Of a stretch of DNA of 64,000 bases, positions 41,301-64,000 are shown in pieces. The notes under the pieces are model-generated. The model did no database searches. It was not told the DNA's origin and saw nothing but the letters and a program-made list of their open reading frames with translations. Position 1 is the stretch's first letter; every line of letters begins with the position of its first letter. The position numbers and the translations under genes are program-made. This DNA comes from Tubulanus polymorphus (lineage: Eukaryota > Animalia > Nemertea): contig NC_134031.1 of the NCBI RefSeq assembly GCF_964204645.1, positions 15,053,807 through 15,117,806 on the forward strand. The letters run 5' to 3'.

Positions 41301-44300
41301 GCTCGTGGCTCGTGATCTCCGCGTCGAGGCGTTTGTGTTTCTTACGTAGATTCTGAACACCGGTTAAATCTTTACCGAAATCATCCGAACCGACCAGTAA
41401 TTTCTTCTCTCTACAAACGTTAAAATAATATCATCATCAATATCATTGTTTTATAAGCTGAACCTAATCTAAACTAGGCTTCATTCAGAACCTAGATCCC
41501 AGTGGCTCGAAAGTTCAAGAGTCATATTTAATCAATGTAAGTCAATCTAATCAATAACAATCAACAACTCAAGATTCCCCAGAACGCAAAGCATTAAATG
41601 TAGAAGATCAATTATTTTCAGTCTTTACCTGATCCAAGCTTCTTCATCATCAACATCTCGGAAGAATTGATGTAAAGTATTCGCTTCATTCAATCTGACT
41701 CTTCTGTGCTCGCATCTCTCTTTTACTCTGAAAATACAAATCCACCATTGTTCAGTTCAACCCGTCGTGAACTCTGAGTGAACGTGCAACTCTTCGCGAA
41801 CTCCGAGTGAACATTACTATAGAAATTAATGAACTCCGAGTGAACGTTTCTATATGAATTAATGAACACTTACGTCTCGTAACGTTCATTAATCGTTTTC
41901 TTGCGTTCGAGAATGGCGTCCGCGTCGCCGACCCCGGATTCGATGAATAAATCGGCGTGATTATTCAAATCGTTCAATCGATCCTCGTGCGCCTCGACCT
42001 CGGCTTCAATGATCTGATGTTTCTTCAGTAGATGTTGAACGGACGACAGGTCCTTGCCGTAGTCCTCGCTCTCGAGCATGTGTTCCGCCTCGCCGAGCCA
42101 GAATTCCATATCCTTGACGGCGGCGTTGTAAACGGCTTGACGATTCGCCTCTTTCAGTTTCTCGCTCTTCTCGCGGGATTTAGTGATCAGATACTCCCAT
42201 TGTTCGGTCAGGTTTACGATACGCGAATTCACGGCGTCCTCCGAACCCAAACATTGCTGACGTTCTATCAATTCTATACACGATAAACAAACACAATCTC
42301 AGTTACTAAAGATTCAATGATCTCAGCGAAATCACGTTTATCTCAAAGGATGAAAATGTAGCAATCTTTTCTAGAACTTTATCGAGTGGTTGTATCACGG
42401 TAAAACCTATGGAAAATATAGAGTGAGGGGTGTGGGGGAATGATAAGAGCGTTCGACTCTGTGAAGCCAGGTCATTGGTACGAACCCCGTACACTACTGT
42501 AGTGTCCTCGGGCACAGCACTTATCATTGCCTCTCTTCACCCACGAGTAAATAAGTACCCGGTCTGATAGATGACTCCTGAGCGCCTAGCAGCAGCAGCT
42601 CAGATGTTACATCTCCCCAGTAAGAGATGACTGATAAATGGTTAAGAGTTTATAGGCCGGGGGCAATATTACTGAAAAGTTGAGTACTCAGAGCTTAGTT
42701 GTCGAATAAACACTATAATCCGTGTATACTGTAGATAAATGAAGAAATCCCACACTTCGAATTTAAAATTATACGATCAAATTTATTATTATGAAACCAC
42801 AACGTTTCGGCTGTTGACTAACAGCCATCATCAGGTGGAATGGATCGTATAAATTTAAATTCAAAGTGAGGGATTTCTTCATTTATCTAGCTTAGCTGGA
42901 TTTAGCGCTATATAAGACACATCTTTATCATTTTTATTAGAAAGCTAGAGGGGAATATAAACTTACTTTCTCCGGCCGACAGAACTTGTTTCAATCGATC
43001 GGAATTAGCCGCCAACTCAGCTTCGAACGCCTGATGTTTTTGATGTTTCGATTGGACGTTCGTCGGATCTCGATAAGACTCTTCGGTCGCCATCTGTAAA
43101 CGTTCCGTTAACCAAGCTTCCATCTCATCGGCGTCGCGAGAGAATGATTGCATCGTCTGAGCTTCATTCAGTTTGCTACGGTTCTCGATCAATTGTTCTT
43201 TCAGGTTACTCCATCTATTCAAATATAAATATAACGCTCGGTCGTCAGTTTTATTTTACATCTTAACTTTCTTTTATCTTCCATCCTGCCCTCTCCCTCC
43301 TTTTTCATCCCTCTCCCTCTCTGTCTCCTCCATCCCTTTCTGGGCCCAGTGTCACAAAAATGTTAAACTAAAATTTTTGGTGTAATTGCTATATTTGGTT
43401 ACGTCATATTTTCAATGAGGACAACAATTCAAACTTAACTGAATTAAGCTTAAACTTTTTCATGAGACTGACCCCCCTCTCTCTGCTGCCCACTCCCTAA
43501 ATCCTCTCTCCCTCTGCGTCACCCCCTATCTGGCCCCTCTCTCACCCTAACTTTCTCTGTCCCTCTCTCCCTAACCTCCCTCTCTCCTTCCCTCACTTTC
43601 CCTCTCTCCCAATATGTCTCTCTGCCTTCTCCCTCAGTCTCAGTCTTCCTTCCTCTTTCCGCCCTTTAACCTCTCTTCTTTCCTTCACCTCTCTCTCCAT
43701 TCCCATGCCTCACTCCACCCTTCTCTCCTACTTTCTCTTACCTGTCAAGAACCTCTGCTTTCTTGGCGTCAATCTTATCGCCGTCGTAGTGATCGGCGGC
43801 GGTAAGCTGATCGGCGAAATTCTGAAGCGCCGATATTTTCTCTTCCTGAACGTTGATCGCTCGGTCGAAATCTTCGTGTTTCTTAATCATGCTATCCACG
43901 TTTTCGCCGTCGGTGTTATCACCGCTCAACGACGTCTCGCGAGTCGCCATCCACAACTCGGCCTGTTCGCAATCTCTCAGGAACAACTGCATCTCTAAAC
44001 ACTGGTCGAGTTTAGCGCGACGCGCGACCCACGCTCTGAAAATATATCGATACATCAATTGCCTGTAACTGGATTCATAGAATGGTATCAACTTGAACCT
44101 GGGGGCTAACTCAATTCATAGCCAATTGAGTTAATCCTCAGGTTAAAGTTGATACCAGTCTATAAAACTGGCCCCTGAGGTCAGCTTTTTACTACCCCAG
44201 ACTACCCTTAGCTCCTGGGACTGGTTTTATAGACTGGTATCAACTTCAACCCGAGGCTAACTCAATTGATTGTCAATTGAGTTAAACCCCCGGGTTTAAG

Positions 44301-47300: not shown

Positions 47301-50300
47301 GAACTGGCCTACTAACTGTGGAACTGGGTCCAAAAACTGCGGAACTGGGTTGTGAACTACGGAACTGGCCCACAAACTATAGAACTGGGTAGTGAACTGC
47401 GGAACTGGGTAGTTGTAGTACTCACCTTGCCAGTAAGACTGTTCCATTTCTCATTGAGATCAGTTTGATGATGGTAAATCTGTTCGGCCTGATCGGGATG
47501 CGTTTGCATCAGACGGTTAGCGGTCTCGTCGAGGACGCGTACTTTATCGCCGAGCGCGGCGAGGTCTCGTTCGACGCCCTCGTGTTTACGCTGCAGACGC
47601 TGCACGGTTGACAGATCGTTACCGACGTTATCGGTGTTCAACGCGTGGTCTTTCTCTTCGATCCAATCCAACGTTTCATCGACGTCTCTACAATCAAAAC
47701 AAAATTTGATACTATAAATAAATCAGGGACGAGAACCAGGGATTATGAAAAAAGCAGGACTTTTGATGAAAGTTTCTGTTAATTAGGCACTAAGCTCAAA
47801 GTGGGGGTTCCCAGCATGATTTCCTCAACAGCCCCATTTCAATTCTAGATGGCAGCACGAACTGGTTATTTTTTCACAGTAGTTTATATTAGCGATACCA
47901 GATGGCAGCACCTAACGAAAATCTTTGGGCGAAGTACCGTCGCATGCTAAATATTCTTGTGAGCCGAAACACAATGCTAGACACAGCAAAGCTTCCACCC
48001 CCCTCCCCCATCAATTTCTCAACGGATCTGGACAATTTGGAAAGCTTGTTTCTCATCACAAAAAAGCGGGAACCGCCTAAAAGCAGGAAATTCTCATCCC
48101 TGATAAATAGATGAAACTGGATCAAAATTCCCTAACTTTACAGGAGTCAGAATTCCCTGATTTTCCCTGCAAGGAAAAATAATTCTGAAATTCCCTGATT
48201 TTCCGATCTGTAAGAAACCAGTCTGGTGAATCATTTAGAAGTAGAATAATGGTCGTTCTTGAAACCCCCAATGACATCCTTAATCAAATAGCGCTGTTTT
48301 AGAGGATAAAACAAGGCCTTAACCATGAACTCAATAGATTATCCTCCCGTTGGTGGCCGCTATAAAATCCCCAAATGACATCATTAAAGCGCCGAGTCAT
48401 TTAAGTAGAATAACGGCCATTCTTGAATCCCCCTATGACATCATCAATCAAATAACGCTGTTTTAGAGGACAAAAGATGTCCTTAACCACAAACTCGAAT
48501 GATTATCCTCCCATTTAAGATGGTGGGCGCTTTAAAATCCCCCTATGACATCATCAAACAGTCGAGTCATGTAAGTAGAATAATGGCGGTTCTTGAATCC
48601 CCCTACGACATCATCTAAACGAACCTGAGATATCGTTGTACTTCGTGCGAGCTCATCAGATTATCGGCTTTCTCTTGCGTCACCTGTTCCAACGCGGTCC
48701 AACGTTCGTTCAGGTTCTGCACGTGCACTCTCATCTTGTCGGCCGACTCGACCTGACCGAGGGCTTCCAGCGTCTCGGCGATCGTGTTCATCTCCATCAA
48801 TCGCGCTTCGTTCGTTTTCAGGTCCTTCTGGAAATCTTCGAATTTGCGCTGCTGGTGTTCGACGTGCTCCAGATCGGTCGGCACGACCTCGGTAACGGCG
48901 ATCGTCTCCTGAAATACCGCGACGATAACAACACGAAATCAGTTACTAATTCGAATTTCAAACGCACCCCAAAATATCGTTTACTTAATATCAAGATTTT
49001 ACGAAGGAATCTTTTCCATTTAGATTTACTAATTCGTTTTTATCGAAAATATCTTTTTGCACGAAAACCATGCGTTTAGTCGGAATAAACACGCCATTCA
49101 AATCGAAGGATTCAATCATCCAATTCTAAATAACCATACAGTAACCGGTAACCATGAATCTAAAAATCAACTCAATTCCGGGCAGTTTACGGAACGATTA
49201 ATTCTGATTGGTCTAATCTATTCTATGTGCACTAAACTCCGCGGGTAATTTAATTCGATCATGATCATTTTCGATTTGATTCGGATGAATTTGTGCAGGG
49301 GATCGTTAAACGAAAAAAAAAAAAGAAGAGAACCAGACCCTGAAACGATGGAAATTTCTCGTAATAAACTTCGGTAAAAATAACCGTCGATAATTAATAT
49401 GTATCTCATGCTTAGAGCGCGTGCAAAATAAAAGCTATTTCAAACGTCTAAAACAATGATAACAATAATATAATCAGTTTGCGGTGATTTGTTATTGAGT
49501 GATTCAGAGATCACGTAAGCGTGTGCAACTCAGGGAGAAGCATCTTAAAATACTTAGGGGTCATTTTAGACCCGTTTTATGGTCATTTGAACGGTCAGCT
49601 CTTTGGGTTAATTTTTTTTTTGTCTTTTTAAGATTCTCAGGTAATACATACATGTGTATTTATAAACATATATATAGATATATATACATATCTGATATTG
49701 AAAGTTTTGGAAGCTAGTGATTTTATAGACATCCACAGAAAAACAATAGTTGCTTCCGTAATTTCAGCAGATACATGTATAAACATGAAACACACACGTT
49801 TCTTTATGTTTTCAGAGAAGAGAGAGAGAGAGGGAGAGAGCAGAGAGAGAGAGAGAGAGAGCACAGTAGTAATGTTTAGTTTAAGATGCGCAGCTATAGG
49901 ACACAAATTCTACAGGATTTTTATTACTCCATCACAGAAAAAACTCGATAGAAATACGAACAATTGTGAAAATTCTTCTGTTATTTGAATTCGCACAAAC
50001 GTCGAAATCTACCGAGTTTTTTTCGCGAAAAATAGACAATTTTGACGAGATTTTTTTTTGGGGATAAAATCAGGTTCTTTTTTGTCTATTTCAACTACTA
50101 AAGTTCTGTTAAATATAAGCTAAAAACCGCACCAGATTTTCCATCAAAAATTAGAACAAAATCTCAGTCGATTTTTTTAGATTTTTTCCCCTCAAAATTC
50201 GTGGAAATCTGACACAGTTTTTTCTTCTAAAGCTAGAATGACAACAACGTAAATAGTAATGAATACTTCTACACAGAATATAAAAACAACTAGAGACCTG

Positions 50301-53300
50301 AACTTCCTGCAAATAAATAAACAAATCAAACATTTAAAAACAATGAACAACAAACAATAACAGTGTGTGGTGTGAAAACAGAGTCAAATGACTCTCGGAG
50401 TCACTGCCGGTGAGGAGTGAGGGAACTGACAATCTTCGTAACGAGTGAAATCGCTGTGAGGACGATTTCCGATTGGTCGAACGCATTCGAAATCCGACCA
50501 ATCGGCGTCAAGCTCTGATGTAATAAACGCACACGACCTGTTCGGAGATCGACATGATCCTACTGTACGAGACGATACCACCGGCGACACCTGGTGTTAC
50601 TTCGGCACCGGCGACACCTGGTGTTACTTCAGCACCGGCGACACCTGGTGTTACTTCTGCACTGGCGACACCTGGTATTACTTCAGCACCGGCGACACCT
50701 GGTGTTAGTTCACCACCGGCGACACCTGGTGTTACTTCCGCACCGGCAACACCTGGTGTTAGTTCACCACCGGCGACACCTGGTGTCGATCGATGATATG
50801 TAACGTAATACTCGTTATCGGAAACGTAATGTCGAGTCGGATGCAGTTCCATGGTTACCGAGGGCGACAGAATCGACCAATCGTACGACTCGTCCTCGTA
50901 ACTGTTAATCTGCGGTCGCAACAAAATATAACCGATTATGAAAACCGGGGTCAGGCCGACCCGCGGGCGGGGAAGGGGCGGACGACCTAGTGTTAAATAC
51001 AGACAATATTCACGGCGACACGTAGCGACACCTGGTGAGCGAATGAATGAACGATCGATCGATACTTTTTTTTAAGCTCTACGTACGACAAAAATCTACA
51101 GAAAATCTACTACGATGTAAAACATTTATGATAAAAGCTTGCGGCGCCGAGATAAGAAGAGACAGAGAGAGAGAGAGATACAGAGGAAGAGAGAGTTTAC
51201 CTTCTCTGAGATCCATTGAGTTAATTCGCTAGCCTCACGCACTAACTGGAACGCACGATTCGACTCTTTCAATTTGTTCGTTCTCTGCTGACCGAGATCG
51301 AGCAAATTCTCATATCTGCAAATAATCGATTACAATCTATAGGTTTGATCGTTGTTTCAGAATGCACCTAATTTCACGGTTTACTTTGTATCTTCCAGTG
51401 AAGTAACATTTACAGTATGAATCACGGTAAATATGTTGCAAGAGAGATTTTTGAGTTTAATTTCGGCATTTCATGTTTTATAAATCAGTGACACAATTAA
51501 CACTAACCATTTCTAGAAACATTCATGCCTCTACTTTATAACTGAGATGACGAAATCCCAAAATCCATACTCTAAACCTGTGGACCTGTATATTTTTTTG
51601 TCAGAAATATAACATACTCTAATTTCGAACTACTATAAACTGTAATTTTATCAATTTCTACATGTATCTTCCAATGAAGTAACATCTACAGTATGAATCA
51701 CGGTAAATATGTTGCAAGAAAGATTTCAGTTTAATTTCAGCATTTTATGTTTTATAAATCAGTGACACAATTAACACTAACTATTTTCATATAGAAACAT
51801 TGATGCTTCAAGTTTATAACTGAGATGACAAAATCCGTACTCTTGATTTTGAGTTTGGTGAGCATCATTTGCAGATACGATCAGTTTATTTCAAATGTTA
51901 TGACTCAAAATAACTGTGGACCTGTATGTTATGTTGTCAGATCTTAATTCATGCCTACTACTAACTGTAATTTCATCAATTTTCATATGTATCTTCCAAT
52001 GAAGTAATATTCACAGTATGAATCACGGTAAATATGTTGCAAGAAAGATTTCAGTTTAATTTCAGCATTTTATGTTTTATAAATCAGTGACACAATTAAC
52101 ACTGACTATTTTCATATAGAAACATTGATGCCTCCAGTTTATTACTGAGATGACAAAATCCATACTCTTGATTTAGAGTTTGGTGACCATCAGGACCCAG
52201 TGAGTTCTACAGTAGTTGATTTGGGATCAAATTGGTTATTTTCAAATGTTTAGACTCAAAATAACTGTGGAGTCGATCTGTTTATTGTATCTTGATCTAG
52301 ACCTACTGCTAACTGTAATTTCATCAATTTCTACATGTATCTTCCAGTGAAGTAATATTCACAGTATGAATCACGGTAAATATGTTGCAAGAAAGATTTC
52401 AGTTTAATATCAGCATTTTATGTTTTATAAATCAGTGACACAATTAACACTGACTATTTATATATAGAAATATACATGCTACTGGTCAGTTTCAGTTACT
52501 GCCCCAGACAGGTCTAATGAAGCCTGGACAGTTCGGGCAATATGGGGGCTATAGGGGCTCCTATCTCCCCAGTTAACCCGATTCGAAGACGATTTTAAAC
52601 TTACTGATTTTCGATTTGTCGCTGTCTCGTCGATACGGTGTACTCATCGGCGAGATTGGATTGACTCGATGAAAGGGCGCCCTCTGTACGTCTGACGTAA
52701 GCCGCCGGTACGAAACCTTGTCTGTCGTTTACTTCCACTTTCCACCAATCCTACAATACATATACATACAATACAGGGCACGCCTACAAACGGGAGGGAG
52801 TCAACAGAGTTAGTGGCATTCATGGGCAAATATCGCAGTGCAGTGTTCTCCACAACAGTTTTTTTGAAGGCTGCCACCCCTTTCATATTTACATCCACCC
52901 CTCTGAAAATCAGCCACCCCTTATAAAATATCGGCTGCCCGTACCAGAGCGGAAATCAATATTCTATCGATGCCTACAAATGCTTTGAAATACATTGAGC
53001 TAATTGTGCAAAATATCACACCAAAATTAAGCTTAATTTTCTGGGTTTTTTTTTTTAGGGGATTGGAAGCCTTGCTACTTCAGCAGCCCCGATGTCATAC
53101 ACTTATCAATGAATGTAGCCCCTTTAAAATTCCAGCATATGGAGAACACTGCAGCGGTGCTGGAAGTGCAGCGACAAAGGCCTTGGCAATTACTTACTGA
53201 ATGACATTTTTTTTTAATATCACATTTTTGACGAAATTGAAGTGCCGGTGAATTGGCTGCGGTTACATATCAGAACTTGTCAAAAATTGGCAATTGCTTC

Positions 53301-56300
53301 CAACGCGCCTGTATTGAAAGCCTTTTCTTGGGAATTTTGATAACTGAACCCCTTAGGGTGGAGTTTAAGGTGTTTTACCAATAGATGGAGCCTCAATAAG
53401 GGAGACTGTGCGACTCAACGGTTGACGACGTACCTTGTTCGCACTGTTCAGCAAAACCAATACGTCTCCTTTCTTCATGGAAACTTCACGCGGGCTTTTC
53501 TCTTGGTAATCGTACAGGGCGAACACGTATTCTTTACCCTGATCGTCTAACAGCGGCGCCTCCTGTTGCTGAAATCGTCAATTAACAAATCCGTTAAGTT
53601 ATTCGACAGGAGCGTGGAAGGGTTCGATCGATGAAATCGAGAGATTATACTTACCCGACAGTTTTCGGCTTCATTTCGCAACGCGTCGATACTAGCTCGA
53701 TACGCGTCGATATCGGCCATTAGAGCTTCGTGTTTCTTCAACAACGCCTGAAATACACGCAATAACACGCTACCGAATTACGAGTGACAGGGGACAGGAG
53801 TAGAGCAAGGGGGTGAGTGAGACGCTTACCTCGCTAGAATCCTCGTCTTTACCGTAATCCGTACTACCGACGATCGGCTCTTTCTCTTTCATCCAAGATT
53901 CGGCTTCGTTGGCGTCTGCGAAATACTGCTGAGCCTGCATCGAGTCGTCCAAATCCTGCGTACGCTGATTAGCTTTATCCTGTAATTACGACAAACGTAC
54001 TAACATGAAGCAAATAGTTCTGTGAAGTAAGTCGTACTCAAATCTTTAACAGTTTACTATTTAAAACCCTAAGCCGATCCAGTTTTGAATCGGTTATTTA
54101 GAATCGGTACGAATACTGAACCCGGTTCCACGGTGAACTGGATGGGTGTGGAACTAGATAGAGTAAGGAATGTCATACTCAATCTTTAATAGTTTAAAAC
54201 TTAACCAGATATGGATCTAGTTTTGAATCGGCTATTTAGAATCGGTACGAATACTGAACCCGGTTCCACAGTGAACTGGGTGGATGTGAAACTGTGGAAC
54301 TACGTGTGTGATAGAGTAAAGAATGCTATACTTACGTTGAGTCCGTTCCATTTTTCCTTCAAATCATCAATTTGTCGTCTGATATCATCGGATGCGTAAT
54401 GTCCGTTCAGGATCATTTTCTCTCCTTCGTCGTAAACCTCTTCGATTCTGTTATCATGACCGTTTAATTCGGCTTGTAGAGCGGAGTGTTTCTTAATCAG
54501 GTTCTGAACTCCAATTAAATCACGTCCTAAACACAAAAATACCAATGTTTATTGAGTAAATATATAAACCTCCTCATAAAGTAGCAGGGTTCAAAACTAA
54601 TCGAGTCTGCAACTTATTAAATATATAAACCTCCTCATAAAGTAGCAGGGTTCAAAACTAACCGAGTCTGACACTAAAAGAGTTAAACTGTATTTGAGAG
54701 CTCATATTTCTAATCTAAGAGATTGAATGATCGATTTGTTAAATGTGATCGGGGAGGGCATGAGAGGGGGCATGAACATGTACTTCTTTTTAATTAGATG
54801 TAGCTATTGAAGGGGGGAGGGGGAGGGGGAGGGGGGAAGAAGTACCTCTATTAATAGACGTGGCCACTGAAGGGAGGGGTGAGAAGGGGTGATAAGTACC
54901 TCTATTAGTAGATGTAGCCACTGGTTCTTTCTCTTTAATCCAGTCCTCCTCGTCCTCGACATCCCGGTAGAACTGCTGCAGCAGAACGGCATCCTGTAAC
55001 CGGTCTCTACGTTTAGTCATCGGAGCCTGCAGCGTCTGATACCGCTCTAAAACGACGGCCTGTTTCGCCGTGATGTTCTCCACGTCGAAGTGACCCTCCT
55101 CGGAGAATTGTTTCGCCTGCTCGGCGATACCGTCGATGCGATCCTGATGCGATCCGATGTCGGTCTCCAGCAGAGCGTGCTTCTTCTGCAGGTTCTGCAC
55201 GTTCGATAAATCTTTGCCGTAATCTTCGGACATCAGTTGACCCTCGACCTCCGACAGCCAGATCTCGATATCTTCGACGTTTCGGTTATACTGCTGTTGT
55301 CCGCTCGCTTCGTTCAATTTCTTTCCTTTCTTTTCGCTCTGATTGAGAAGTTGTTTCCACAATGAGTCGATCTCATCCAAACGATCCCTGAAAACAACGA
55401 ACATCGCATGAACAAACATGGAAAACTGAACTAAACAAACTGAGTTAACATTTGAATGGCAGGACGAGCTGACTGTAACAATGTGATATGAGGTCATGGA
55501 GGTGAGGGAGAGGTCAGGAGAGGTGAGGTTAGAGGTAACGAGAGGTCATGGAGAAGTAAGGTAGGGAGATGTTACGGAGGTGAAGAAGAGAGGTCAGGGA
55601 GAGGTCATGGAAGAGGTAAGGAAAGGACAGGTCATGGAGAGAGGCGAGGCAAGAGGTAAGGGAAGGAGAGGTGAAAAATAGGTAAAGCAGAGGCAAGGGA
55701 GGGAGAGGTCAGAGAGAGAGAGATAGAGGTAACTCACTGGATAGTGTCCGTTGCGTAATGTTGATTATCGATAAGCTCAGTTCCTGTTGTGTTCACTGAT
55801 TCAATGCGACTCGCGTTCGCGGTCATTTCAGCCTCGAAATTCTGATGTTTCTGAACTTTACCCTGGAGATTTGTCGGGTCGGTATAGTTCTCGTCGGTTG
55901 CCGCTTTCAGTTTCTCGTTGATCCATCCTTTAGTTTCGTCGCAGTCTCTCTCGAACATCTGCAGCCGGTACGAGTCCTCCAGCAGGTGTTTCCTCGTCGT
56001 CGAACGTTCGATCAGGACGGTGCGTCGCTGTAGCAACTGAAGAGAATCGATAACAATTGAAACCATTATAAATTACGGTTCAAAATTCACCTCGGTTTAA
56101 TACATTTGTTACGCTTTTTCAACTGGTGAATCAGTTAAGAAACACAATATCCATGATAAGACTCGGTGAGTAAAAAATCCCACAAAGTTTGAACGAATCT
56201 AAAAAGTTTACTTAAAAATTAGAAATATTTCGCGTGGTCACTACCACGCTTCTTCAGTCTAAAATAATTCTAGACAGAAGAAGGGTGTTAGTGAACACAC

Positions 56301-59300
56301 AAAATATTCCTAATTCTTAAATAAACTTTTCAGATTCGTTCACACATTGTGGGATTTTTTACTCATTTTCAACTGGTGTGATTATTGAAACCCGGGCAGT
56401 CGAGTTTAAGGATAAGTCGAAATTAATAATTTAAATATTTTCAACCGCTACGATTATCGGCGGTAACCGCTGGCGATTCTTACAGCGTCTCTCCTCTGAG
56501 CGACGTCGTCGGCCGCGTAGTGCTCGCTTTCGATCAGCTTCGTCGCGAAGTCGTCTAAAGCTTTAACTTTCTCCTCCTGGGCGGTGAGAGATTTCTCGAA
56601 ATCCTCGTGTTTCTTAATCAACGCTTCCACGCTGTCGAGAGAGTCGCCTAAATCTTCGTTCGTCAGGAACGCCTTCGAATGATAAAACAACAACGCACGT
56701 CAGAACAGGAAAACCGGCAAGGCTACTGAGGGAAGTGAGGATTCAGCAATAATACTGGGTTATCGCGCTTAAATTTCTTCTACATTTCAATTAAATTTGA
56801 GTCAACGTTTCTGATGAATGAATAAATTTTCAGTGAAATCATTACCATACACTCAGTTATATCTATTCGATGACTCGTTTGATAATTTTGGATTTGGCAG
56901 CCTAAAAATTCAAGTTCGAATTTCATCGAAAATTAACTGATTTTCACAACGAATGACCCGGTGTTTTGTTGCGTCATCTGGTGTTGCCTGTATATCCCAT
57001 TATTCGCAACCTCAACTTGGCACCATGTCGATACAACTTACACTTAGTAAATCGAATTTGAAATATAGATTGGGCATCAAAACTAGAGATGACTTCAGTC
57101 AGTGTTCTCCACAACAGGTTTTAGAGGGGCTGCCTACCCTTTTTCATTTTTACATCCACCCCTCTAAAAATCAGCCACTACCAGAGTGGATGTCAATATT
57201 CTATCCATGCTTTGAAACATATCGAGCTAATGTGAAAAATAGAAGATCACACCAAAAGCATCAAGTTACTTCAGCAGCACACTTAACAATGACTACAACG
57301 CTCTTAGAATTCCAGCATATCGCGAATACTGTCAGTAATGCGATGACTTAAAGAAGGTACTATTGACAGGGATGAAAACGGCCCATATTGAAAAAGTCGG
57401 AAAATATTTTCAAAAAAAAAGAATTTTTTTGGGGAACAATAATCAGTAACTTTAAGCCAAAAAACTTACTTCCTTTTGGTCAAAATGTTAATAGGTTGGG
57501 CCTGAATTAGAGCCGCTTTTTGAATGAGACGCCATAATGGTTTCTCCGACTCCACAGTTGTGCTAACAACTGCCGAAAACCGTCTTAAGGAGCACTCCTA
57601 ACTACGGAGCGCTCCGATGTGACGTCCGCGATTGAGGTGATTTACACTGTTCTCAGGAATAAAGAAAATGTTAGAAAAGGTCGGAAATCCGTCTATGGTC
57701 GGAAGATTTTCATCCCTGTATTGACCGTGCAGCCATCCGTGTACAGGGATAGGAAAGGGGGGGATGATATAGTAGACATACCTCTTGTTTACCCATCCAC
57801 GTATCGGCCTGTTCGGTATCGCGATAGAACAACTGCAAATCCATGCACTGCTCGTAGAGGATTCGACGTTCCTCCCACAGTTCGAGTAAACTTGTTTTAT
57901 CATTCGCCAACATCACCAGTTTCTCCTTAACGTCGTCGACGGCGTAATGATCGGACTCGAGGAGAGCTTGACCGGCTTCAGCCGTAGCGCGGAAACTATC
58001 TTCACGAGCGTCGATTTCACCCTGCCGACAATAATCATATCACTGACAATCATATATACACAATCATATACCATTAACAACAATGATTTACTCTATCTTA
58101 AGATATCTTATGAAGATAATTTTACTTCAAGGCCTGGGTCTTGTTTGACTCAGGGTGTTAACTCAATATATTTTGAATTGAGTTAACCCCCATGTCAAAG
58201 ATAATACCAGTCCATAAAATTGGACCGTGGTTTATAGACTGGTATTAACTTTAACCAGGGGGGGTGGGGTCTTTTTCACTTGAGTGAGCCCCCGGTTAAA
58301 GGTATTACCAGTAGATAAAACCAGCCCCGAATTTTTATTGTCTAAAAAGGTAAGTTTTAAGATAACATTTCAAAGCTCTCCATAGACAGTTTTAGCGACA
58401 GACTTCAATGGATTCAGTTCTAAAGACAATTCGTCATCGATCATTATTACAGTTCTACGGAAAAACTTCCACTCAGACTCCTACGGTTTATATCAATGTA
58501 TTCAAGCGCTTACCTTATGCTCGTGGTGACGCTCGAGTAACGCCTCGGCGCCGGTGACGTCTTTCGCCAGATCATCCGCCGAGATGACGGCCTTCATGTC
58601 ATTGATCCACGTGATCAATTCGCGGAAGTCGGCGAGGAATCGATGCAGATAGTACGCCGCGTCGAGACGGCCCTTACGCGACTCCGCCTTACGCTTCAAA
58701 CTATCCCAATTCGAATCGATCTCGCTGCGCTTGTTATGGATCTGATCGCCGCATTCTGGGTGAAGGTCTTCTAAACGTTCCGCCTCCGTATCCAACGACT
58801 CCACCTATCGAGAGATCATCGCACTACGGTCACTTTTCATATACAAAGGAAGTGTAGGCACTTATGAATTCTACACCAAAATTAATTAAAATTGGTCCCT
58901 GAGATACAGATAGGGGTCAGGGTACAATAGACTCAGTCTCTGTCTAATTTGTAAAGACCAGTTAATTTCAGCATCATTAAAACATATTTGTTGATATTGA
59001 CGATATTATCATAGAGATACATGTTTTTTATATTATCATTCATTTGTATTTATCTATATCAGTCAGTAGTTGAGTGAACAAATCCAGCCTGTGATTGGCT
59101 GAAGCTAGTGACCTAGTATGCAAATAAGTCTATAGCTGATCAGTTAATCTACATAACAGTAAACCTAACCCAAGCGGCTTAAAGCAGGTCACCCAATATC
59201 TAACAAATAGCCCCACCTAAGGTTAGCACATTTCTACCAATCCTAAACCTAGCTTCTGATCTGGCTGGAGCTGGTCACCTCATATACAAATGAGTTTTAG

Positions 59301-62300
59301 TCGCTGAAACTGCATAACACAAACCCTAAACCTAGCCCGTGATTGGCTAAAGCTGGTTACCTAGCATACAAATAACCTGGCTCCTAGAATAAGTTAATGG
59401 TTTCTCGAACGTACAGTGTACTCGACTCCATCTCTGACTCAGATAGGTATTAGATTATGGTCTAATTAAGATGGTTACTGATACTTGATACTTGAGGCCT
59501 TGATACTAATGTTTATGGTCTAAGTAACTGGGCCCAGTTGCACAGTCGTGACTTAAGTCCAAAAGTGACCTTATATCTTAAGACTGGTCTTAAGTTGTTA
59601 GATTAGCCATAGAACTAAGTTGGTCTTAGACTGGTCTTAAGTCTAAGCCATAACTATGCAACCGGCCCCTGAGTTTACTTTTTCTGTCTTTTCTTAGTCT
59701 CGGCTTACAGTAAAGACTGTTGAACATTCTACGCGAAGTTATCGATTGATTAGAACCCTAACCCTAATCAATTCTACCACAAGGAAAGTAGTTGATCGGA
59801 GGAACCTAAAGTTGAAGGTAGACAAGGCCCAGCATACTAACCCTGACCCCAATGCTACGTACCTTTTCCCCGAGCGCGGCCAAATCTCGTTCGATAACCT
59901 CGTGTTTTCGCTGCAAAGCTTGAACGCTCTGTAAATCTCTGCCGTAGTCGTCGCTGGACAGAGTGACGTCTTTCTCGTTGATCCAAGCGATCGTTTCGTC
60001 GCAGTCGCGGTTGAAATGTTGTATTTCGCGAGCGCCGAACAGTTTCTCTTGTCTCTGTTGAGCCAACGATTTCAATCGCATCCAAGCTTCGTTTAATTCC
60101 TGCAACGCACGGAAACAAATAAACCCTTTAATCACAATTTATCAACGCGATGCTCTAAATCTTGTCTGATTTGAGATCGATATCAAAGTTGGCCGATACA
60201 TAGACTCTGTTTTAGTGAGGATTCAGTTTCAACCCTTAGTTTGTATGACTTCTGATAACTTGTTTAGTCCTTTATTCAGGATTCAGTTTCAACCCTTAGT
60301 TTGTATTACTTCTGGTAACTTGTTTAGTCTTTTATTCTGGATTCTGTATATCTTTCCGTTGTTACTCTACTCAGTATTCCTGAAGATGACTATCAGGAAA
60401 GTCGAAACATCGAATAAACTACTGGTACTAGCTCGAGGAAACATTTTCGAAGTTTATATATTTTTTCGTTATTATTGTGGGATTCTCTTTTTTTTCATCG
60501 TTACAACACGGATGTAGTGTTTTATGAATGGTTTTCCATCAGTTCTCAGTTAATAGTAAAATCTCATTCTTAATTTGGTCTTAGGTTGGCAGCACCTGTC
60601 AAACATAGTGAAATACTAGTAAATAACGATACATTGCGCTGTGGTGTAGACGCACTACAGTGGTATTTCCGTTATTCAGCACACTATGGGGTATTAATTC
60701 GTCAGCACTGACAGGGTTGAGCTAATGCTATTGGGTACAGGGCAATGTACAATTACCTGGGAACGAAAAGGTTACGATATCATATGAAACTGACCTCTTT
60801 CTTTTTCTCGATGGTTTCAGTTTCGGGATGTTCCTCGCCGATCAGTTTGTCTCCCAACTCGTTCACCTCGGTCACTCGTTCCTCGTGGCTCAATAAATCC
60901 TTCTGAAACTCGTCGTACTTCTTCTGCAACAGCTCCACGTGTTCGAGGTCGTGGCCTAGCTCTTCAGACGTTACGAAAGCTTCCTGCAACGGAAAAACCG
61001 CAGACAACTCTGATCAGAAATCGGACGCGACAATACCACAGAAAACTGTTTGATAAATTTTACCAAATTACCTACTAACTTATTTTATCAATTTCTACAT
61101 GTATCTTCCAGTGAAGTAATATCTACAGTATGAATCACGGTAAATATGTTGCAAGAAAGATTTCAGTCTAATTTCAGCATTTCATGTTTTATAAATCAGT
61201 AACACAATTAACACTGACTATTTTCATAGAGTAACATTCATGCCTCTAGTTTATAACTGAGATGAAATCCTAAAATTTAGAATCGATCAGGAATAGTTGT
61301 TTCAGTGTGGACCTAATTTCACGGTTAACTTTGTATCTTCCAGTGAAGTAATATCTACAGTATGAATCACGGTAAATATGTTGCAAGAAAGATTTCAGTT
61401 TAATATCAGCAATTTATGTTTTATAAATCAGTGACACAATTAACACTGACTATTTTCATAGAGAAACATTCATGCTGCTTGTTTAACTACGATGACAAAA
61501 TCCTAACTCTTAATCTAGACCCATGAGTTTAGTTTGCATCACGACCCAGTGAGTTCTACAGTTGTTGATTCCGAGTTAAACTCAGTTCATTTCGAATGCT
61601 TCGAGTCAAAGAGTAACCGAATCAGAAACAGAAGTAAATACCTTGTCTCTAATCCAGAACATGACCTCCTCGCATTCTCGCAGGAACTGGACTAGTTTCA
61701 AAGCCTGTTGTAATCGCTGTCCTTTCTCTCCGAGCTTCAACATCAACAGATCCCACAATCGGTGCAACTCATCCAGCGTTTTCTGAATGGTCTCCGACGC
61801 GTAATGCTGTTCGTTGATCATCTCGTAGCCGATGTTGTCCAACTCGACAATGGCGTTGGCGTGAGCCTGCACTTCGGCTTCGAACGCCTGGTGCTTCTGG
61901 ATCTTAGCCTGAAATAGAACGTCACAATCTAATAGTAGAGAGACATCTATATTCACTCTCAGTACAAATCCAATTCATGTAGATTTTGAGACTTAAATTT
62001 TAAGTTGCATTTATGTAAACAGAGCTTCAATATTCATGCAAATGTAAGTTAAATGAAAAATGAATTATCATTATGAATCTGAAGGTATGACGCATCCACA
62101 GTTCAGCACTCAGTTTCTACTAACGTAACTAAGTTTAAAACTCTTTATTTGATGAAATGAGTTCATTTTTAATTAGTTAACTCAAACTGTTGCAGTCAAA
62201 TCTTTACTCATAACTGTGGAACTGAGTAACTGTAATGTAGAACCAGGGGCTGCAGTTGCTTGAAAGTTGGTTAGAGTCAACCAGTGGATAGGTGACATAG

Positions 62301-62923
62301 ATAATTAGAAGTTCAATATCACTACGACATCTATCCGCTGGTTATCTTCTTTGTATCAACTTTCGAGGAAAAGGCGCCCCTGATATTAGGAACAGGGTCA
62401 GCGCATTTTCGTTCCTTCATTATTCCTAAAATATCTGGGGGCTGCGGTTGCTCAAAAGTTGAGTGGAGTTAACCAATTGATATAGTTGACATAGTGACAA
62501 TAATTGAAAGTTCACTGTAACTGGGGGAGGTTAAATTAGTTCATTTTCAATCAGTTAAATCCGAGTCAAATCTTAACACAGAACTGTGGAACCGTGTCAT
62601 GGTATTTTAAACTGTCGATTTTCTTTTACCAGGGCTTGAATCTCCCCCCCCCCCACAACGGAGAGTTTTAAGCTTACCTGTAAGTTCGTCGGATCTCTGA
62701 AGCTCTCGTCGGAAGCCGTCTGCAATTTCTCCAGAATCCAACTCTCCAACTCGTCGGCGTCGCGTTTGAAATACATGTACCGTCGAGCATCCTCGAGTTT
62801 CTCCCGTCGCTCGTGGGTTGCTGTCTTGAACGCCGAATACCGCCCGAGCACCTGATCACGTCGCTCCTGGATATCCTCGGGAGTCTCCAGTATCTTTATC
62901 TCTCTCGGCTGAATCTCCACCAT
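35351..62923 (-). CDS. SPTAN1: Spectrin alpha chain (non-erythroid type), complete multi-exon gene; first coding exon 62678-62923, last 35351-35476
   Basis: The N-terminus is [26 protein letters not shown]. It is followed by successive spectrin repeats, an SH3 domain ([19 protein letters not shown]|[19 protein letters not shown] at ~53435-53569 and ~52605-52750) and C-terminal EF-hands ([31 protein letters not shown]), ending [12 protein letters not shown]. Confidence 0.97.
36545..36820. repeat. 35-bp minisatellite (agtaggaatgttgaaacattcagtttagatacacc, about 8 copies) filling a spectrin intron
   Basis: ccagtaggaa recurs at 36711, 36746 and 36781. Confidence 0.85.
38838..39130. mobile_element. 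piggyBac-like MITE (inverted copy of 411-690)
   Basis: TTAA-CCCTTTCAGTGC ... GCACTGAAAGTG-TTAA. Confidence 0.75.
39409..39941. mobile_element. Foldback element / long palindromic MITE
   Basis: Arms of ~250 bp are imperfect reverse complements (cctactgtcagtcac...tgcgacgttttggtccgtaattt vs aaattacggaccgaaacgtcgca...gtgacagacagtagg). Confidence 0.75.
42440..42715 (+). mobile_element. tRNA-derived SINE with conserved central domain
   Basis: A tRNA-like head is followed by gtgtcctcgggcacagcactt...cacccacgagtaaataagtacc, which resembles Nin/Deu-domain SINE cores. Confidence 0.5.
42797..42838 (-). ncRNA. Minimal type I hammerhead ribozyme motif (Penelope-like element)
   Basis: ccac CUGAUGA u ggcuguu-aguc-aacagcc GAAA C GUU gugg. 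It sits in the loop of an inverted repeat (42732-42778 / 42843-42889). Confidence 0.75.
44936..45112. mobile_element. Internally deleted piggyBac-like MITE
   Basis: TTAA-CCCTTTCAGTGC ... GCACTGAAAGGG-TTAA. Confidence 0.75.
47150..47412. repeat. ~20-bp tandem (actgtggaactgg) repeat
   Basis: The same motif is dispersed across the window (2720-2925, 12275-12350, 20040-20215, 23040-23130, 40435-40540, 40898-41007), often as inverted pairs. Confidence 0.75.
50581..50787. repeat. 27-bp GC-rich minisatellite, about 7.6 copies (ccggcgacacctggtgttacttcagca)
   Basis: Units start at 50581, 50608, 50635 ... 50770. Confidence 0.9.
51384..51530 (-). ncRNA. Box H/ACA snoRNA copy 1 (predicted guide for 18S rRNA U1174-equivalent, SNORA40-like target)
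   Basis: The structure is hairpin - H box AAAUUA - hairpin - ACA. The 3' pocket UUGCAAC / UACUUC is complementary to 18S GAAGUA-U-G-GUUGCAA. Confidence 0.8.
51660..51808 (-). ncRNA. Box H/ACA snoRNA copy 2
   Basis: As copy 1, with a compensatory basal stem agcau/augcu. Confidence 0.8.
51985..52133 (-). ncRNA. Box H/ACA snoRNA copy 3
   Basis: As copy 1. Confidence 0.8.
52333..52481 (-). ncRNA. Box H/ACA snoRNA copy 4
   Basis: As copy 1. The H box variant AUAUUA still fits ANANNA. Confidence 0.78.
56220..56261 (-). ncRNA. Minimal type I hammerhead ribozyme motif (Penelope-like element)
   Basis: uaga CUGAAGA a gcguggu-agug-accacgc GAAA U AUU ucua. It lies within palindrome 56168-56363, whose other arm carries a decayed copy. 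Confidence 0.75.
60376..60415 (+). ncRNA. Minimal hammerhead-like motif (variant), antisense to spectrin
   Basis: auuc CUGAAGA u gacu-aucaggaa-aguc GAAA C AUC gaau, followed by aataaa. Stem III has a C-A mismatch. Confidence 0.5.
61097..61245 (-). ncRNA. Box H/ACA snoRNA copy 5
   Basis: As copy 1, in spectrin intron 60984-61641. Confidence 0.8.
61329..61477 (-). ncRNA. Box H/ACA snoRNA copy 6
   Basis: As copy 1, with H box AUAUUA. Confidence 0.78.
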
Positions 62924-63870
62924 CTTTACGTCGTTTAGATTTACTTCTTACTGAAAAAGACACAAACACGCGCTCAAGGTCAGCCGGGCGGATAATGCGA
63001 ATAGAAATAATCTACCGACGTCAGAAGAATTTTTTCAATATCGTTAACTCCCGACGAACAAGAAATTATTCGCAAAGATTTTCAGACTTAAATCGTGAGA
63101 AGATAATAAAAACATTGCAAAAAAAGACATTTCGAGAAGAATCTTTCATGATCTGATTGTTGCAAATAACCCACTGTTAAATGGGGAACCCGCAAACCAG
63201 CTATCCCTAGCTATCCCGAGCTACCTCGTTGTCAAAAACTTTGAACTGGATTTTTAGAATCCTGAATCCATACACTTTCACAGGACTCACCAAATATGAA
63301 ATACTTTCATTCTTCTAATCAGAAATCGATATAGTTTTTTTTTCCATAAATAATTGATTCATTTAAGAGAAAAGTTCATTCAGATTTAATTGAAATGTAG
63401 AAGGAAATTGAACGCGGACGACCAACTATCTACTAGCGAACCCTGGCGGATCCTCGCTTGCCATACGTGGAATCCTCACTTGCAACAGTAGCACTGCGGG
63501 TACCCCATTACTGCAATAGCCTACATAGATCCAAACCTCACCTAACTAATTATTATTGCAAACAAATTAGCATTCTCGGTGGACTAATTAATGTTCATAA
63601 TAACCGCTAGCCGGAGAGGGGGAAGGGGAGCGCACCTACCTGCTAGACTGAACTCTATCAGATAAACTACTACACAGTAGACTATATAGAATACGATATA
63701 TCCGAACAGTAATAACAGGATGAAAACCGCGAATACATCTGGATAATCAGCAAGGAACGGACACCTTTGCATCAGAAATCAATATATTCACTCCTCGTAG
63801 CAGCAGCAGCAGGTACTGAGAGCTGAGACGATGCTCGTAGACACAGCGAGCCTGCATCACAGTAACAGCA

Positions 63871-64000
63871 GTCTCAACTCAGGAGTCCCTGTCTGAGTAG
63901 CATATAAAACAGCCAGAGAAGTCTTAACTCAGGAGTCCCTGTCTGTGTAGCATATAAAACAGCCAAAAAAGTCTCGACTCAGGAGTCCCTGTCTGTGTAG
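63871..64000. repeat. 50-bp tandem repeat running off the window end
   Basis: aggagtccctgtctg recurs at 63881, 63931 and 63981. Confidence 0.8.

What the first reader, a model, noticed from the sequence alone, without database searches (positions are those of the whole stretch)
51384..61477. Six box H/ACA snoRNA copies hidden in alpha-spectrin introns, predicted to guide 18S rRNA pseudouridylation
Seen: a ~147-nt unit occurs four times in intron ~51317-52604 and twice in intron 60984-61641, always on the spectrin sense strand. Each folds as hairpin 1 (ggcau/augcc base, agucagug/cacugauu top), H box (AAAUUA or AUAUUA), hairpin 2 (ucuuuc/ggaaga base, auauuuac/gugaauau top), then ACA 15-16 nt after the pocket. 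Copy-to-copy changes in the stems keep pairing (GC>AU compensatory, AU/GU swaps), and the pocket cores UUGCAAC and UACUUC are invariant. Established: these strands are complementary to 18S rRNA ...GGAAGUA U G GUUGCAA..., leaving an unpaired U-N. From memory, this is the site equivalent to human 18S U1174 assigned to SNORA40/ACA40. Inference: these are functional guides. A cytoskeletal host gene and several snoRNAs per intron are both atypical for animals, where one snoRNA per intron in translation-related hosts is usual. This implies endonucleolytic or unusual processing, or recent snoRNA amplification. I could not assign a target to the 5' pocket.
Basis: partly seen in the sequence, partly recalled or inferred. 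Interest (0 to 1): 0.8.

Follow-up and report, generated by a model that had tools for sequence, protein, structure and literature searches.

The report
Six-copy H/ACA snoRNA in spectrin introns
Two introns of this invertebrate's alpha-spectrin gene carry six well-kept copies of a small guide RNA that should convert one conserved uridine of 18S ribosomal RNA to pseudouridine; it is a convincing new example of a known kind of gene, in a layout already described in flies, and no RNA data exist to show it is expressed.

Summary
Six ~148-nt units lie on the window's minus strand, the sense strand of alpha-spectrin: four in intron 52604-51316 and two in intron 61641-60984. They are the only copies in the 268-Mb genome, so they are not a SINE or MITE; a real MITE in the next intron gave over 500 candidates with the same tool.

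The consensus fold and five of six single folds give hairpin, H box (AAAUUA/AUAUUA), hairpin, ACA. Units are 92% alike, while their 60-nt flanks are at background (65-68% against 64%). ACA never varies, and the three bases after it all vary.

The 3' pocket pairs 6+7 perfect base pairs around U1206 of the animal's own 18S, and 16 nt separate the upper stem from ACA. That U corresponds to human U1174, the SNORA40 site in helix 27.

Weak points:
- No RNA run was available.
- There is no Rfam match, SNORA40 included.
- Covariation among such similar copies is not significant.
- The 5' hairpin has no target.
- Conservation in other species could not be tested.

Several H/ACA genes per intron and cytoskeletal host genes are described in Drosophila. 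Unchecked notes of this scan report many multi-copy intronic snoRNA arrays elsewhere in this genome. Verdict: real, new member of a known kind, moderate-to-low interest.

The parts
61329..61476 (-). H/ACA snoRNA copy c6 (first of two in intron A); H box AUAUUA; one U-U mismatch at the top of the basal stem of hairpin 1
   Evidence: 177.8 bits
61097..61244 (-). H/ACA snoRNA copy c5 (second in intron A), 84 nt after c6; its 3' end lies 113 nt before the 3' splice site
   Evidence: 174.8 bits
52333..52480 (-). H/ACA snoRNA copy c4 (first of four in intron B), 124 nt after the 5' splice site; similarity to the other copies begins exactly at the 5' stem; its single MFE fold is not canonical
   Evidence: 170.4 bits
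51985..52132 (-). H/ACA snoRNA copy c3, the reference copy: hairpin 1 52132-52064, H box 52062-52057, hairpin 2 52049-51991, 5' guide strand UUGCAAC 52042-52036, 3' guide strand UACUUC 52006-52001, ACA 51990-51988
   Evidence: 178.7 bits
51660..51807 (-). H/ACA snoRNA copy c2
   Evidence: 176.8 bits
51384..51529 (-). H/ACA snoRNA copy c1, the most divergent (87-90% to the others): 4-nt deletion in hairpin 1 and a C-A mismatch in the basal stem of hairpin 2; its 3' end lies 68 nt before the 3' splice site
   Evidence: (157 bits)
60984..61641 (-). Intron A of alpha-spectrin (GT at 61641, AG ending at 60984), host of c6 and c5
   Evidence: flanking exon is a spectrin repeat
51316..52604 (-). Intron B of alpha-spectrin (GTAAGT from 52604, AG ending at 51316), host of c4 to c1; it follows the exon that ends the SH3 domain
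   Evidence: the 52601-52738 ORF reads [14 protein letters not shown], the SH3 C-terminal half; it has no Pfam hit of its own; SH3_1 on the preceding exon, 53365-53526
51126..62923 (-). 5' part of the host gene, alpha-spectrin (N-terminal exon near 62923, spectrin repeats, SH3 insert); the gene continues below 51126 and was not traced further

Best explanation
These are six paralogous genes for one box H/ACA small nucleolar RNA, carried in the sense orientation in two introns of alpha-spectrin.

Inferred mechanism. The host pre-mRNA is transcribed. Dyskerin/Cbf5, Nop10, Nhp2 and Naf1/Gar1 assemble on each two-hairpin unit. The units are then freed from the spliced intron and trimmed to the edges of the particle. 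With two and four units per intron, this needs cuts in the 84-200-nt spacers as well as trimming from the ends.

In the nucleolus the pocket of the 3' hairpin binds 18S helix 27. The 3' strand UACUUC pairs with 1200-1205 and the 5' strand UUGCAAC pairs with 1208-1214. U1206 and G1207 stay unpaired at the base of the upper stem, and U1206 is isomerised to pseudouridine. This is the same site that SNORA40 serves in vertebrates (human U1174). The 5' hairpin is nearly continuous stem and probably serves only for particle assembly.

The family grew by local duplication, including one transfer between the two introns, and has been kept by selection or gene conversion.

Shown here: sequence, fold, copy number, conservation pattern, complementarity. 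Inferred: expression, processing, the modification itself.
For: - Copy number and placement: six copies and no more in 268 Mb, by BLAST and by covariance model. All are on the host's sense strand inside introns. As a positive control, a MITE in the next intron gave 527 candidates on all contigs and both strands.
- Fold: an unconstrained consensus fold gives hairpin, hinge with ANANNA, hairpin, ACA. Five of six single folds agree, and the opposite strand does not.
- Conservation: units are 0.92 identical, against 0.68 and 0.65 for the 60-nt flanks and 0.64 for shuffled 60-mers. Variable columns: hairpin 1 17/69, hairpin 2 5/59, ACA 0/3, the three bases after ACA 3/3. c4 loses all similarity exactly 5' of the basal stem, and two flank types diverge right after ACA.
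- Variable positions: the three in the upper stem of hairpin 2 are A/G opposite U. The single pocket change lies outside the rRNA-pairing part. The H-box change falls on an N position.
- Target: 6+7 perfect Watson-Crick pairs around U1206 of the animal's own 18S. The next best site in 18S-ITS-5.8S-28S scores 7. Three of 5000 pocket shuffles reach the observed score. Sixteen nt lie between the upper stem and ACA (sequence).
- Site: it equals human U1174, from the offset of 74 to the helix-31 uridine. This is SNORA40's target in helix 27 (PMC8881200, PMC6466398), called a highly conserved position (PMC6984369).
- Other guides: no other place in the genome combines these guide strands with an upper stem flush to the pocket. 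Pattern matches elsewhere are at control level (read by eye).
Against: - No RNA evidence. The only runs holding the stretch look like low-coverage DNA (even depth, contigs crossing the exon-intron border), and the one possible RNA run is empty here.
- No Rfam family matches, even at E<=10, and the SNORA40 model finds nothing in the genome.
- Covariation support is not significant (229/500 shuffles), and fold z-scores are weak (-0.4 to -1.6).
- The 5' hairpin has no rRNA target above chance, and its pocket would sit 19 nt from the H box.
- c1 and c6 have stem mismatches, and c4 misfolds on its own.
- Conservation in other species is untested. The spectrin contigs I could fetch come from distant animals and hold no copy.
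Confidence: 0.8

Rival explanations
1. The units are real H/ACA RNAs, but the intron products are not, or not only, free snoRNAs. With two or more units per intron, trimming from both ends would leave RNAs capped by an H/ACA particle at each end (sno-lncRNA or SLERT-like), or some copies are decaying pseudogenes while one or two do the work.
For: Two and four units share one intron, with 84-200-nt spacers. Spacer blocks are shared between the two introns (D16). c1 has a deletion and a stem mismatch, c6 a U-U mismatch, and c4 misfolds on its own.
Against: Most spacers have decayed to background similarity, which speaks against a conserved spacer function. All six copies keep both guide strands, the H box and ACA intact. 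Drosophila intronic H/ACA clusters are reported as an expression strategy for snoRNAs (Huang et al. 2004, title cited in PMC5932544).
Confidence: 0.1
2. This is a neutral local duplication of intron sequence that only resembles an H/ACA RNA and is not made into a stable RNA.
For: No expression data, no Rfam match, insignificant covariation and weak fold z-scores.
Against: A neutral duplicate would decay like its flanks, yet units are 92% alike and flanks are at background, with sharp edges at the 5' stem and at ACA. A 13-bp bipartite match to a known pseudouridylation site at the right distance from ACA is very unlikely by chance.
Confidence: 0.07
3. The unit is a short mobile element (SINE or MITE) that landed in the spectrin introns.
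For: It is repeated, AT-rich and intronic.
Against: There are only six copies in the genome, all in one gene and on one strand. No terminal inverted repeats or poly(A) tails show in the alignments. The same search readily finds a true MITE family.
Confidence: 0.01

Closest known systems
Vertebrate SNORA40 (ACA40; Rfam RF00561)
   Same: A box H/ACA guide whose pocket places the pseudouridine at the conserved helix-27 position of 18S (human U1174) (PMC8881200, PMC6466398, PMC6984369). The site here, U1206, is the same position.
   Different: There is no detectable similarity to the Rfam model, so common descent is not shown. The human gene sits in TAF1D (PMC6466398) and not in spectrin. Human SNORA40 also serves 28S U4546, whereas no second rRNA target exists here.
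[quoted passage not shown] 2004, J Mol Biol 341:669; Huang et al. 2005, RNA 11:1303; both cited in PMC5932544)
   Same: Several H/ACA snoRNA genes, often isoforms of one guide, lie inside introns of a protein-coding host. Cytoskeleton and cell-division genes are preferred hosts in flies (PMC5932544).
   Different: A different phylum (earlier scan notes call this genome the ribbon worm Tubulanus polymorphus; I did not check this), a different host gene and a different target. I could not read the two primary papers, only their titles and how they are cited.
Multi-copy intronic snoRNA arrays elsewhere in this genome (scan notes: PSMD3, RPS18, EF1-beta, RPL8, DDX6; mixed C/D + H/ACA introns)
   Same: The same layout: tandem copies of one guide in one or two neighbouring introns of a housekeeping gene.
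   Different: The arrays that were followed up are box C/D. This one is H/ACA and sits in a cytoskeletal gene. Those notes are unchecked AI notes.
snoRNA-ended long non-coding RNAs (sno-lncRNAs; the H/ACA-ended SLERT) - from my own knowledge
   Same: Two snoRNA units in one intron can protect the sequence between them.
   Different: Nothing here shows a stable spacer RNA, and the spacers are poorly conserved.

Membership tests
Box H/ACA snoRNA (class) | Two hairpins joined by a single-stranded hinge that carries an H box (ANANNA) | tested here: met
   Consensus fold and 5 of 6 single folds. The hinge carries AAAUUA or AUAUUA 1 nt after hairpin 1, and the change falls on an N position.
Box H/ACA snoRNA (class) | ACA directly after hairpin 2, three nucleotides from the mature 3' end | tested here: inconclusive
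   ACA is invariant and abuts the basal stem in all six copies, and the next three bases all vary. The mature 3' end cannot be seen without RNA reads.
Box H/ACA snoRNA (class) | An internal loop (pocket) whose two strands pair with the target on either side of an unpaired U-N | tested here: met
   6+7 perfect pairs with the animal's own 18S, 1200-1205 and 1208-1214, leaving U1206-G1207 unpaired; 3 of 5000 shuffles reach this.
Box H/ACA snoRNA (class) | Target uridine about 14-16 nt from the ACA (or H) box | tested here: met
   For the 3' pocket, 9 pocket nt plus 7 stem nt give 16 nt between the upper stem and ACA (sequence). The 5' hairpin fails this test (19 nt) and has no target.
Box H/ACA snoRNA (class) | A stable ~130-150-nt RNA bound by dyskerin/Cbf5; pseudouridine present at the predicted site | not testable with these tools
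   No RNA run holds the stretch, and no modification data exist.
SNORA40 (Rfam RF00561) | Score at or above the family's gathering cut-off (51 bits) against the covariance model | tested here: not met
   No match at E<=10 in the intron or in the whole genome. I therefore file it as a functional counterpart, not as a shown member.
SNORA40 (Rfam RF00561) | Guides the helix-27 uridine of 18S (human U1174) | tested here: met
   Offset of 74 nt to the helix-31 GAC-U-CAAC uridine, human m1acp3-pseudouridine 1248 (established knowledge), and the SNORA40 target lists (PMC8881200, PMC6466398).
SINE / MITE | Many dispersed copies in both orientations | tested here: not met
   Six copies, in one gene and on one strand; the control MITE gave 527 candidates.

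The most novel reading that the evidence does not exclude
In this ribbon-worm lineage, polycistronic intronic snoRNA arrays are the normal way to make snoRNAs. That would need a dedicated endonuclease step in the spacers, as in plants and yeast. Failing that, introns like these would yield H/ACA-capped spacer RNAs with a role of their own, possibly coupling spectrin expression to ribosome modification.
Probability: 0.12. Interest if true: 0.55.

Novelty: new member of a known kind. Interest (0 to 1): 0.3.

Why it matters
It adds a well-defined H/ACA guide for a conserved 18S helix-27 pseudouridine in a phylum whose snoRNAs, as far as I know, have hardly been described. It also gives a clean H/ACA example of the many-copies-per-intron layout that this scan keeps meeting in this genome.

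Taken together, such arrays could show that the vertebrate rule of one snoRNA per intron is not general for animals. They also raise a testable question: how are several snoRNAs released from one intron? Taken alone, the finding is a useful annotation and not a surprise.

Tried and rejected
- Rfam at gathering cut-off on the whole window, and at E<=10 on intron B and E<=1 on 30000-64000: no H/ACA family match on the units. The weak SNORD74, SNOR75 and CRISPR-DR hits are chance-level.
- The SNORA40 model against the whole genome: nothing.
- A target for the 5' hairpin in 18S-ITS-5.8S-28S: best scores equal those of shuffled pockets. snRNAs were not searched.
- RNA evidence: the look-up of sequencing runs listed two runs that hold the stretch, neither on record as RNA, and one possible RNA run of the same species label. 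When laid, X1 and X2 behave as DNA and X3 gives nothing.
- Other species: one exon (by reference, not joined to others) gave spectrin fragments of at most 78% identity. Five contigs were fetched. The covariance model, a guide-motif scan and Rfam all found no copy in them, and the matching intron of L012 holds no match. The animals are distant and the contigs short, so this says nothing either way.
- A hit named as a human protein fragment was not fetched, compared or searched with.
- A metagenome scan for a degenerate core of hairpin 2: no match.
- A crude C/D-box scan of 30000-64000: nothing.
- The paper by Huang et al. 2005 was not held under the PMC id I tried. A fly snoRNA name that I guessed for the same site gave no paper.
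Full report
**What is there**

A repeat search of 50000-64000 finds one family with six members, at spacings of 276, 325 and 348 nt in one place and 232 nt in another 8.8 kb away. Read on the minus strand, each member runs from a GCAU stem to ACA. The units, from 5' stem to ACA+3 on the minus strand, are:
- c6 61476-61329
- c5 61244-61097
- c4 52480-52333
- c3 52132-51985
- c2 51807-51660
- c1 51529-51384

**Host gene**

The minus strand also carries the host gene. The exons translate to spectrin repeats and an SH3 domain (Pfam). One exon finds proteins that their sources name 'spectrin alpha'. The SH3 insert within spectrin repeats marks alpha-spectrin (established knowledge).

GT and AG in the sequence set the two introns at 61641-60984 (658 nt, holding c6 and c5) and 52604-51316 (1289 nt, holding c4 to c1).

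**Not a mobile element**

BLAST of one unit against the whole 268-Mb assembly returns exactly these six places. A covariance model built from the six, which could reach more divergent relatives, also returns only these six.

As a positive control I searched with a 311-bp element from the neighbouring intron (52841-53151) whose ends are inverted repeats of each other. It gave 527 first-look candidates, and the 40 that were scored lay on eleven contigs and both strands.

**Fold**

RNAalifold, given only the six sequences, predicts two hairpins, a single-stranded hinge and a single-stranded tail. Five of the six single-sequence minimum-energy folds agree. c4 alone prefers a long-range alternative, and the + strand of c3 gives no such shape.

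The hinge holds AAAUUA in four copies and AUAUUA in two, one nucleotide after hairpin 1. The change is on an N position of ANANNA. ACA abuts the basal stem of hairpin 2.

Hairpin 2 has these parts, from base to tip and back:
- a 7-bp basal stem;
- an internal loop of 7 nt (UUGCAAC) on the 5' side and 9 nt (UACUUCAYU) on the 3' side;
- an 8-bp upper stem with a small extension;
- a loop.

Sixteen nucleotides separate the upper stem from ACA, the spacing expected of a working pocket. Hairpin 1 is almost continuous stem with small bulges.

Fold energies are only slightly better than shuffles (z -0.4 to -1.6), which is usual for AU-rich snoRNAs and is no evidence on its own.

**Selection**

The copies are 87-97% alike (mean 0.92). 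Their 60-nt flanks average 0.68 upstream and 0.65 downstream, which equals the 0.64 that shuffled 60-mers reach with the same aligner.

The edges are sharp:
- c4 loses all similarity exactly 5' of the basal stem.
- Two different flank types (c1 and c6 against c2 to c5) diverge right after ACA.

Variable columns by region are hairpin 1 17/69, hinge 5/16, hairpin 2 5/59, ACA 0/3 and the three bases after ACA 3/3.

In hairpin 2 the three variable stem positions are A/G opposite U, so pairing is kept. The only pocket change is the Y of UACUUCAYU, outside the part that pairs with rRNA. One change, in c1, breaks a basal pair.

One pair at the base of hairpin 1 shows AU, GU and GC in different copies. 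The formal count is 98% paired cells, one compensatory pair, seven one-sided pair-keeping changes and five broken cells. The shuffle control reaches this in 229 of 500 trials, although slid registers pair only 35-49%. So the stems are real in the sequence, but covariation among six near-identical paralogues proves little. The flank contrast is the stronger argument.

Some flank similarity survives: c2-c3 upstream 0.92, c3-c4 downstream 0.77 and c1-c6 downstream 0.76. This shows that the family grew by local duplication, with one transfer between the two introns.

**Target**

The genome's rDNA was found with the eukaryotic SSU model, and one unit was fetched.

I scanned 18S, the spacers, 5.8S and 28S for U-N sites flanked by complements of the two pocket strands. 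The best site has 6+7 perfect Watson-Crick pairs around U1206, and the next best scores 7. Only 3 of 5000 composition-preserving shuffles of the pocket reach 13.

U1206 lies 74 nt 5' of the uridine in GAC-U-CAAC of helix 31. In human 18S that uridine is m1acp3-pseudouridine 1248 (established knowledge), so U1206 corresponds to human U1174. This assumes that the intervening, near-universally conserved stretch has no indel, which is my recollection of the human sequence and was not tested here.

SNORA40 is listed as the guide for 18S U1174, in helix 27 (PMC8881200; PMC6466398). Its 18S site is called a highly conserved position in vertebrates (PMC6984369).

The pocket of the 5' hairpin finds nothing above chance in the rRNAs.

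A genome-wide pattern search for the two guide strands followed by ACA gives 28 matches against 37 for the reversed control. By eye, none of the 22 matches outside spectrin has an upper stem flush with the pocket. These six are thus the only evident candidates for this exact guide, though a guide with shorter complementarity would have escaped.

**What is missing**

- No Rfam family matches the units at any threshold tried, and the SNORA40 model finds nothing in the genome. This is expected for invertebrate H/ACA RNAs, but it means that homology with SNORA40 is not shown.
- No RNA data could be brought to bear. Two of the three listed runs hold the stretch, at shares that fit about 0.4-0.8x DNA coverage, with even depth and contigs that cross the exon-intron border. 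The third, a possible RNA run, lays nothing.
- Spectrin contigs from other animals (at most 78% protein identity) hold no copy. They are too distant and too short to count against the reading. A metagenome pattern scan was blank.

**How it compares**

The arrangement is not the vertebrate textbook case, but it is described. [quoted passage not shown] 2004, cited in PMC5932544). [quoted passage not shown]

Earlier unchecked notes of this scan report many multi-copy intronic snoRNA arrays in this same genome, mostly box C/D, and call the animal the ribbon worm Tubulanus polymorphus. I did not verify either point.

**Verdict**

This is a real six-member H/ACA snoRNA family that most likely guides pseudouridylation of 18S U1206, the SNORA40 site. 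My confidence is about 0.8. It is a new member of a known kind, in a layout known from flies. Release of several units from one intron implies cuts in the spacers; that step, expression and the modification itself remain to be shown.

Noticed in passing
window 52841-53151 and 57100-57331: A ~311-bp element with inverted ends (it begins CAGTGTTCTCC and ends GGAGAACACTG) sits in two spectrin introns. It belongs to a dispersed family with at least 527 first-look candidates at 76-84% identity, on many contigs and both strands, so it is a MITE-like repeat.
   Followed up: partly
window 50552-50811: A 27-bp minisatellite of about nine to ten units, just below the spectrin exon at 51126-51315. ORFs on both strands read through it as TPGVAG-type repeats. 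I did not determine whether it is coding or intronic.
   Followed up: no
window 51532-51562, 51808-51838, 52133-52163, 61245-61272, 61477-61503 (minus strand): A block of ~30 nt (GGATTTTGTCATCTCAGTTATAAAC...) directly 5' of five of the six units is better kept than the rest of the spacers, and c4 lacks it. It may be a remnant of the duplicated segment or a processing signal.
   Followed up: partly
window 52176-52221 and 61525-61570: A 46-nt spacer block, 87% alike, is shared between the two snoRNA-bearing introns (upstream of c3 and of c6). It supports a segmental copy from one intron to the other.
   Followed up: no
window 54076-54293, 54557-54675, 59080-59375, 60211-60330: Further short tandem or near-tandem duplications (58-80 nt, 83-95% alike) lie in other spectrin introns. 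None matches Rfam or a crude C/D-box scan, and their nature is unknown.
   Followed up: partly
window 63859-64000: A 50-bp tandem repeat (at least three units) runs off the window's end, upstream of the spectrin start.
   Followed up: no
window 42711-42908 (-) and 44072-44168 (+): Long hairpin-like stretches give sub-threshold Rfam hits to unrelated miRNA precursor families (42 and 35 bits, far below gathering). They are probably inverted repeats and not microRNAs.
   Followed up: no
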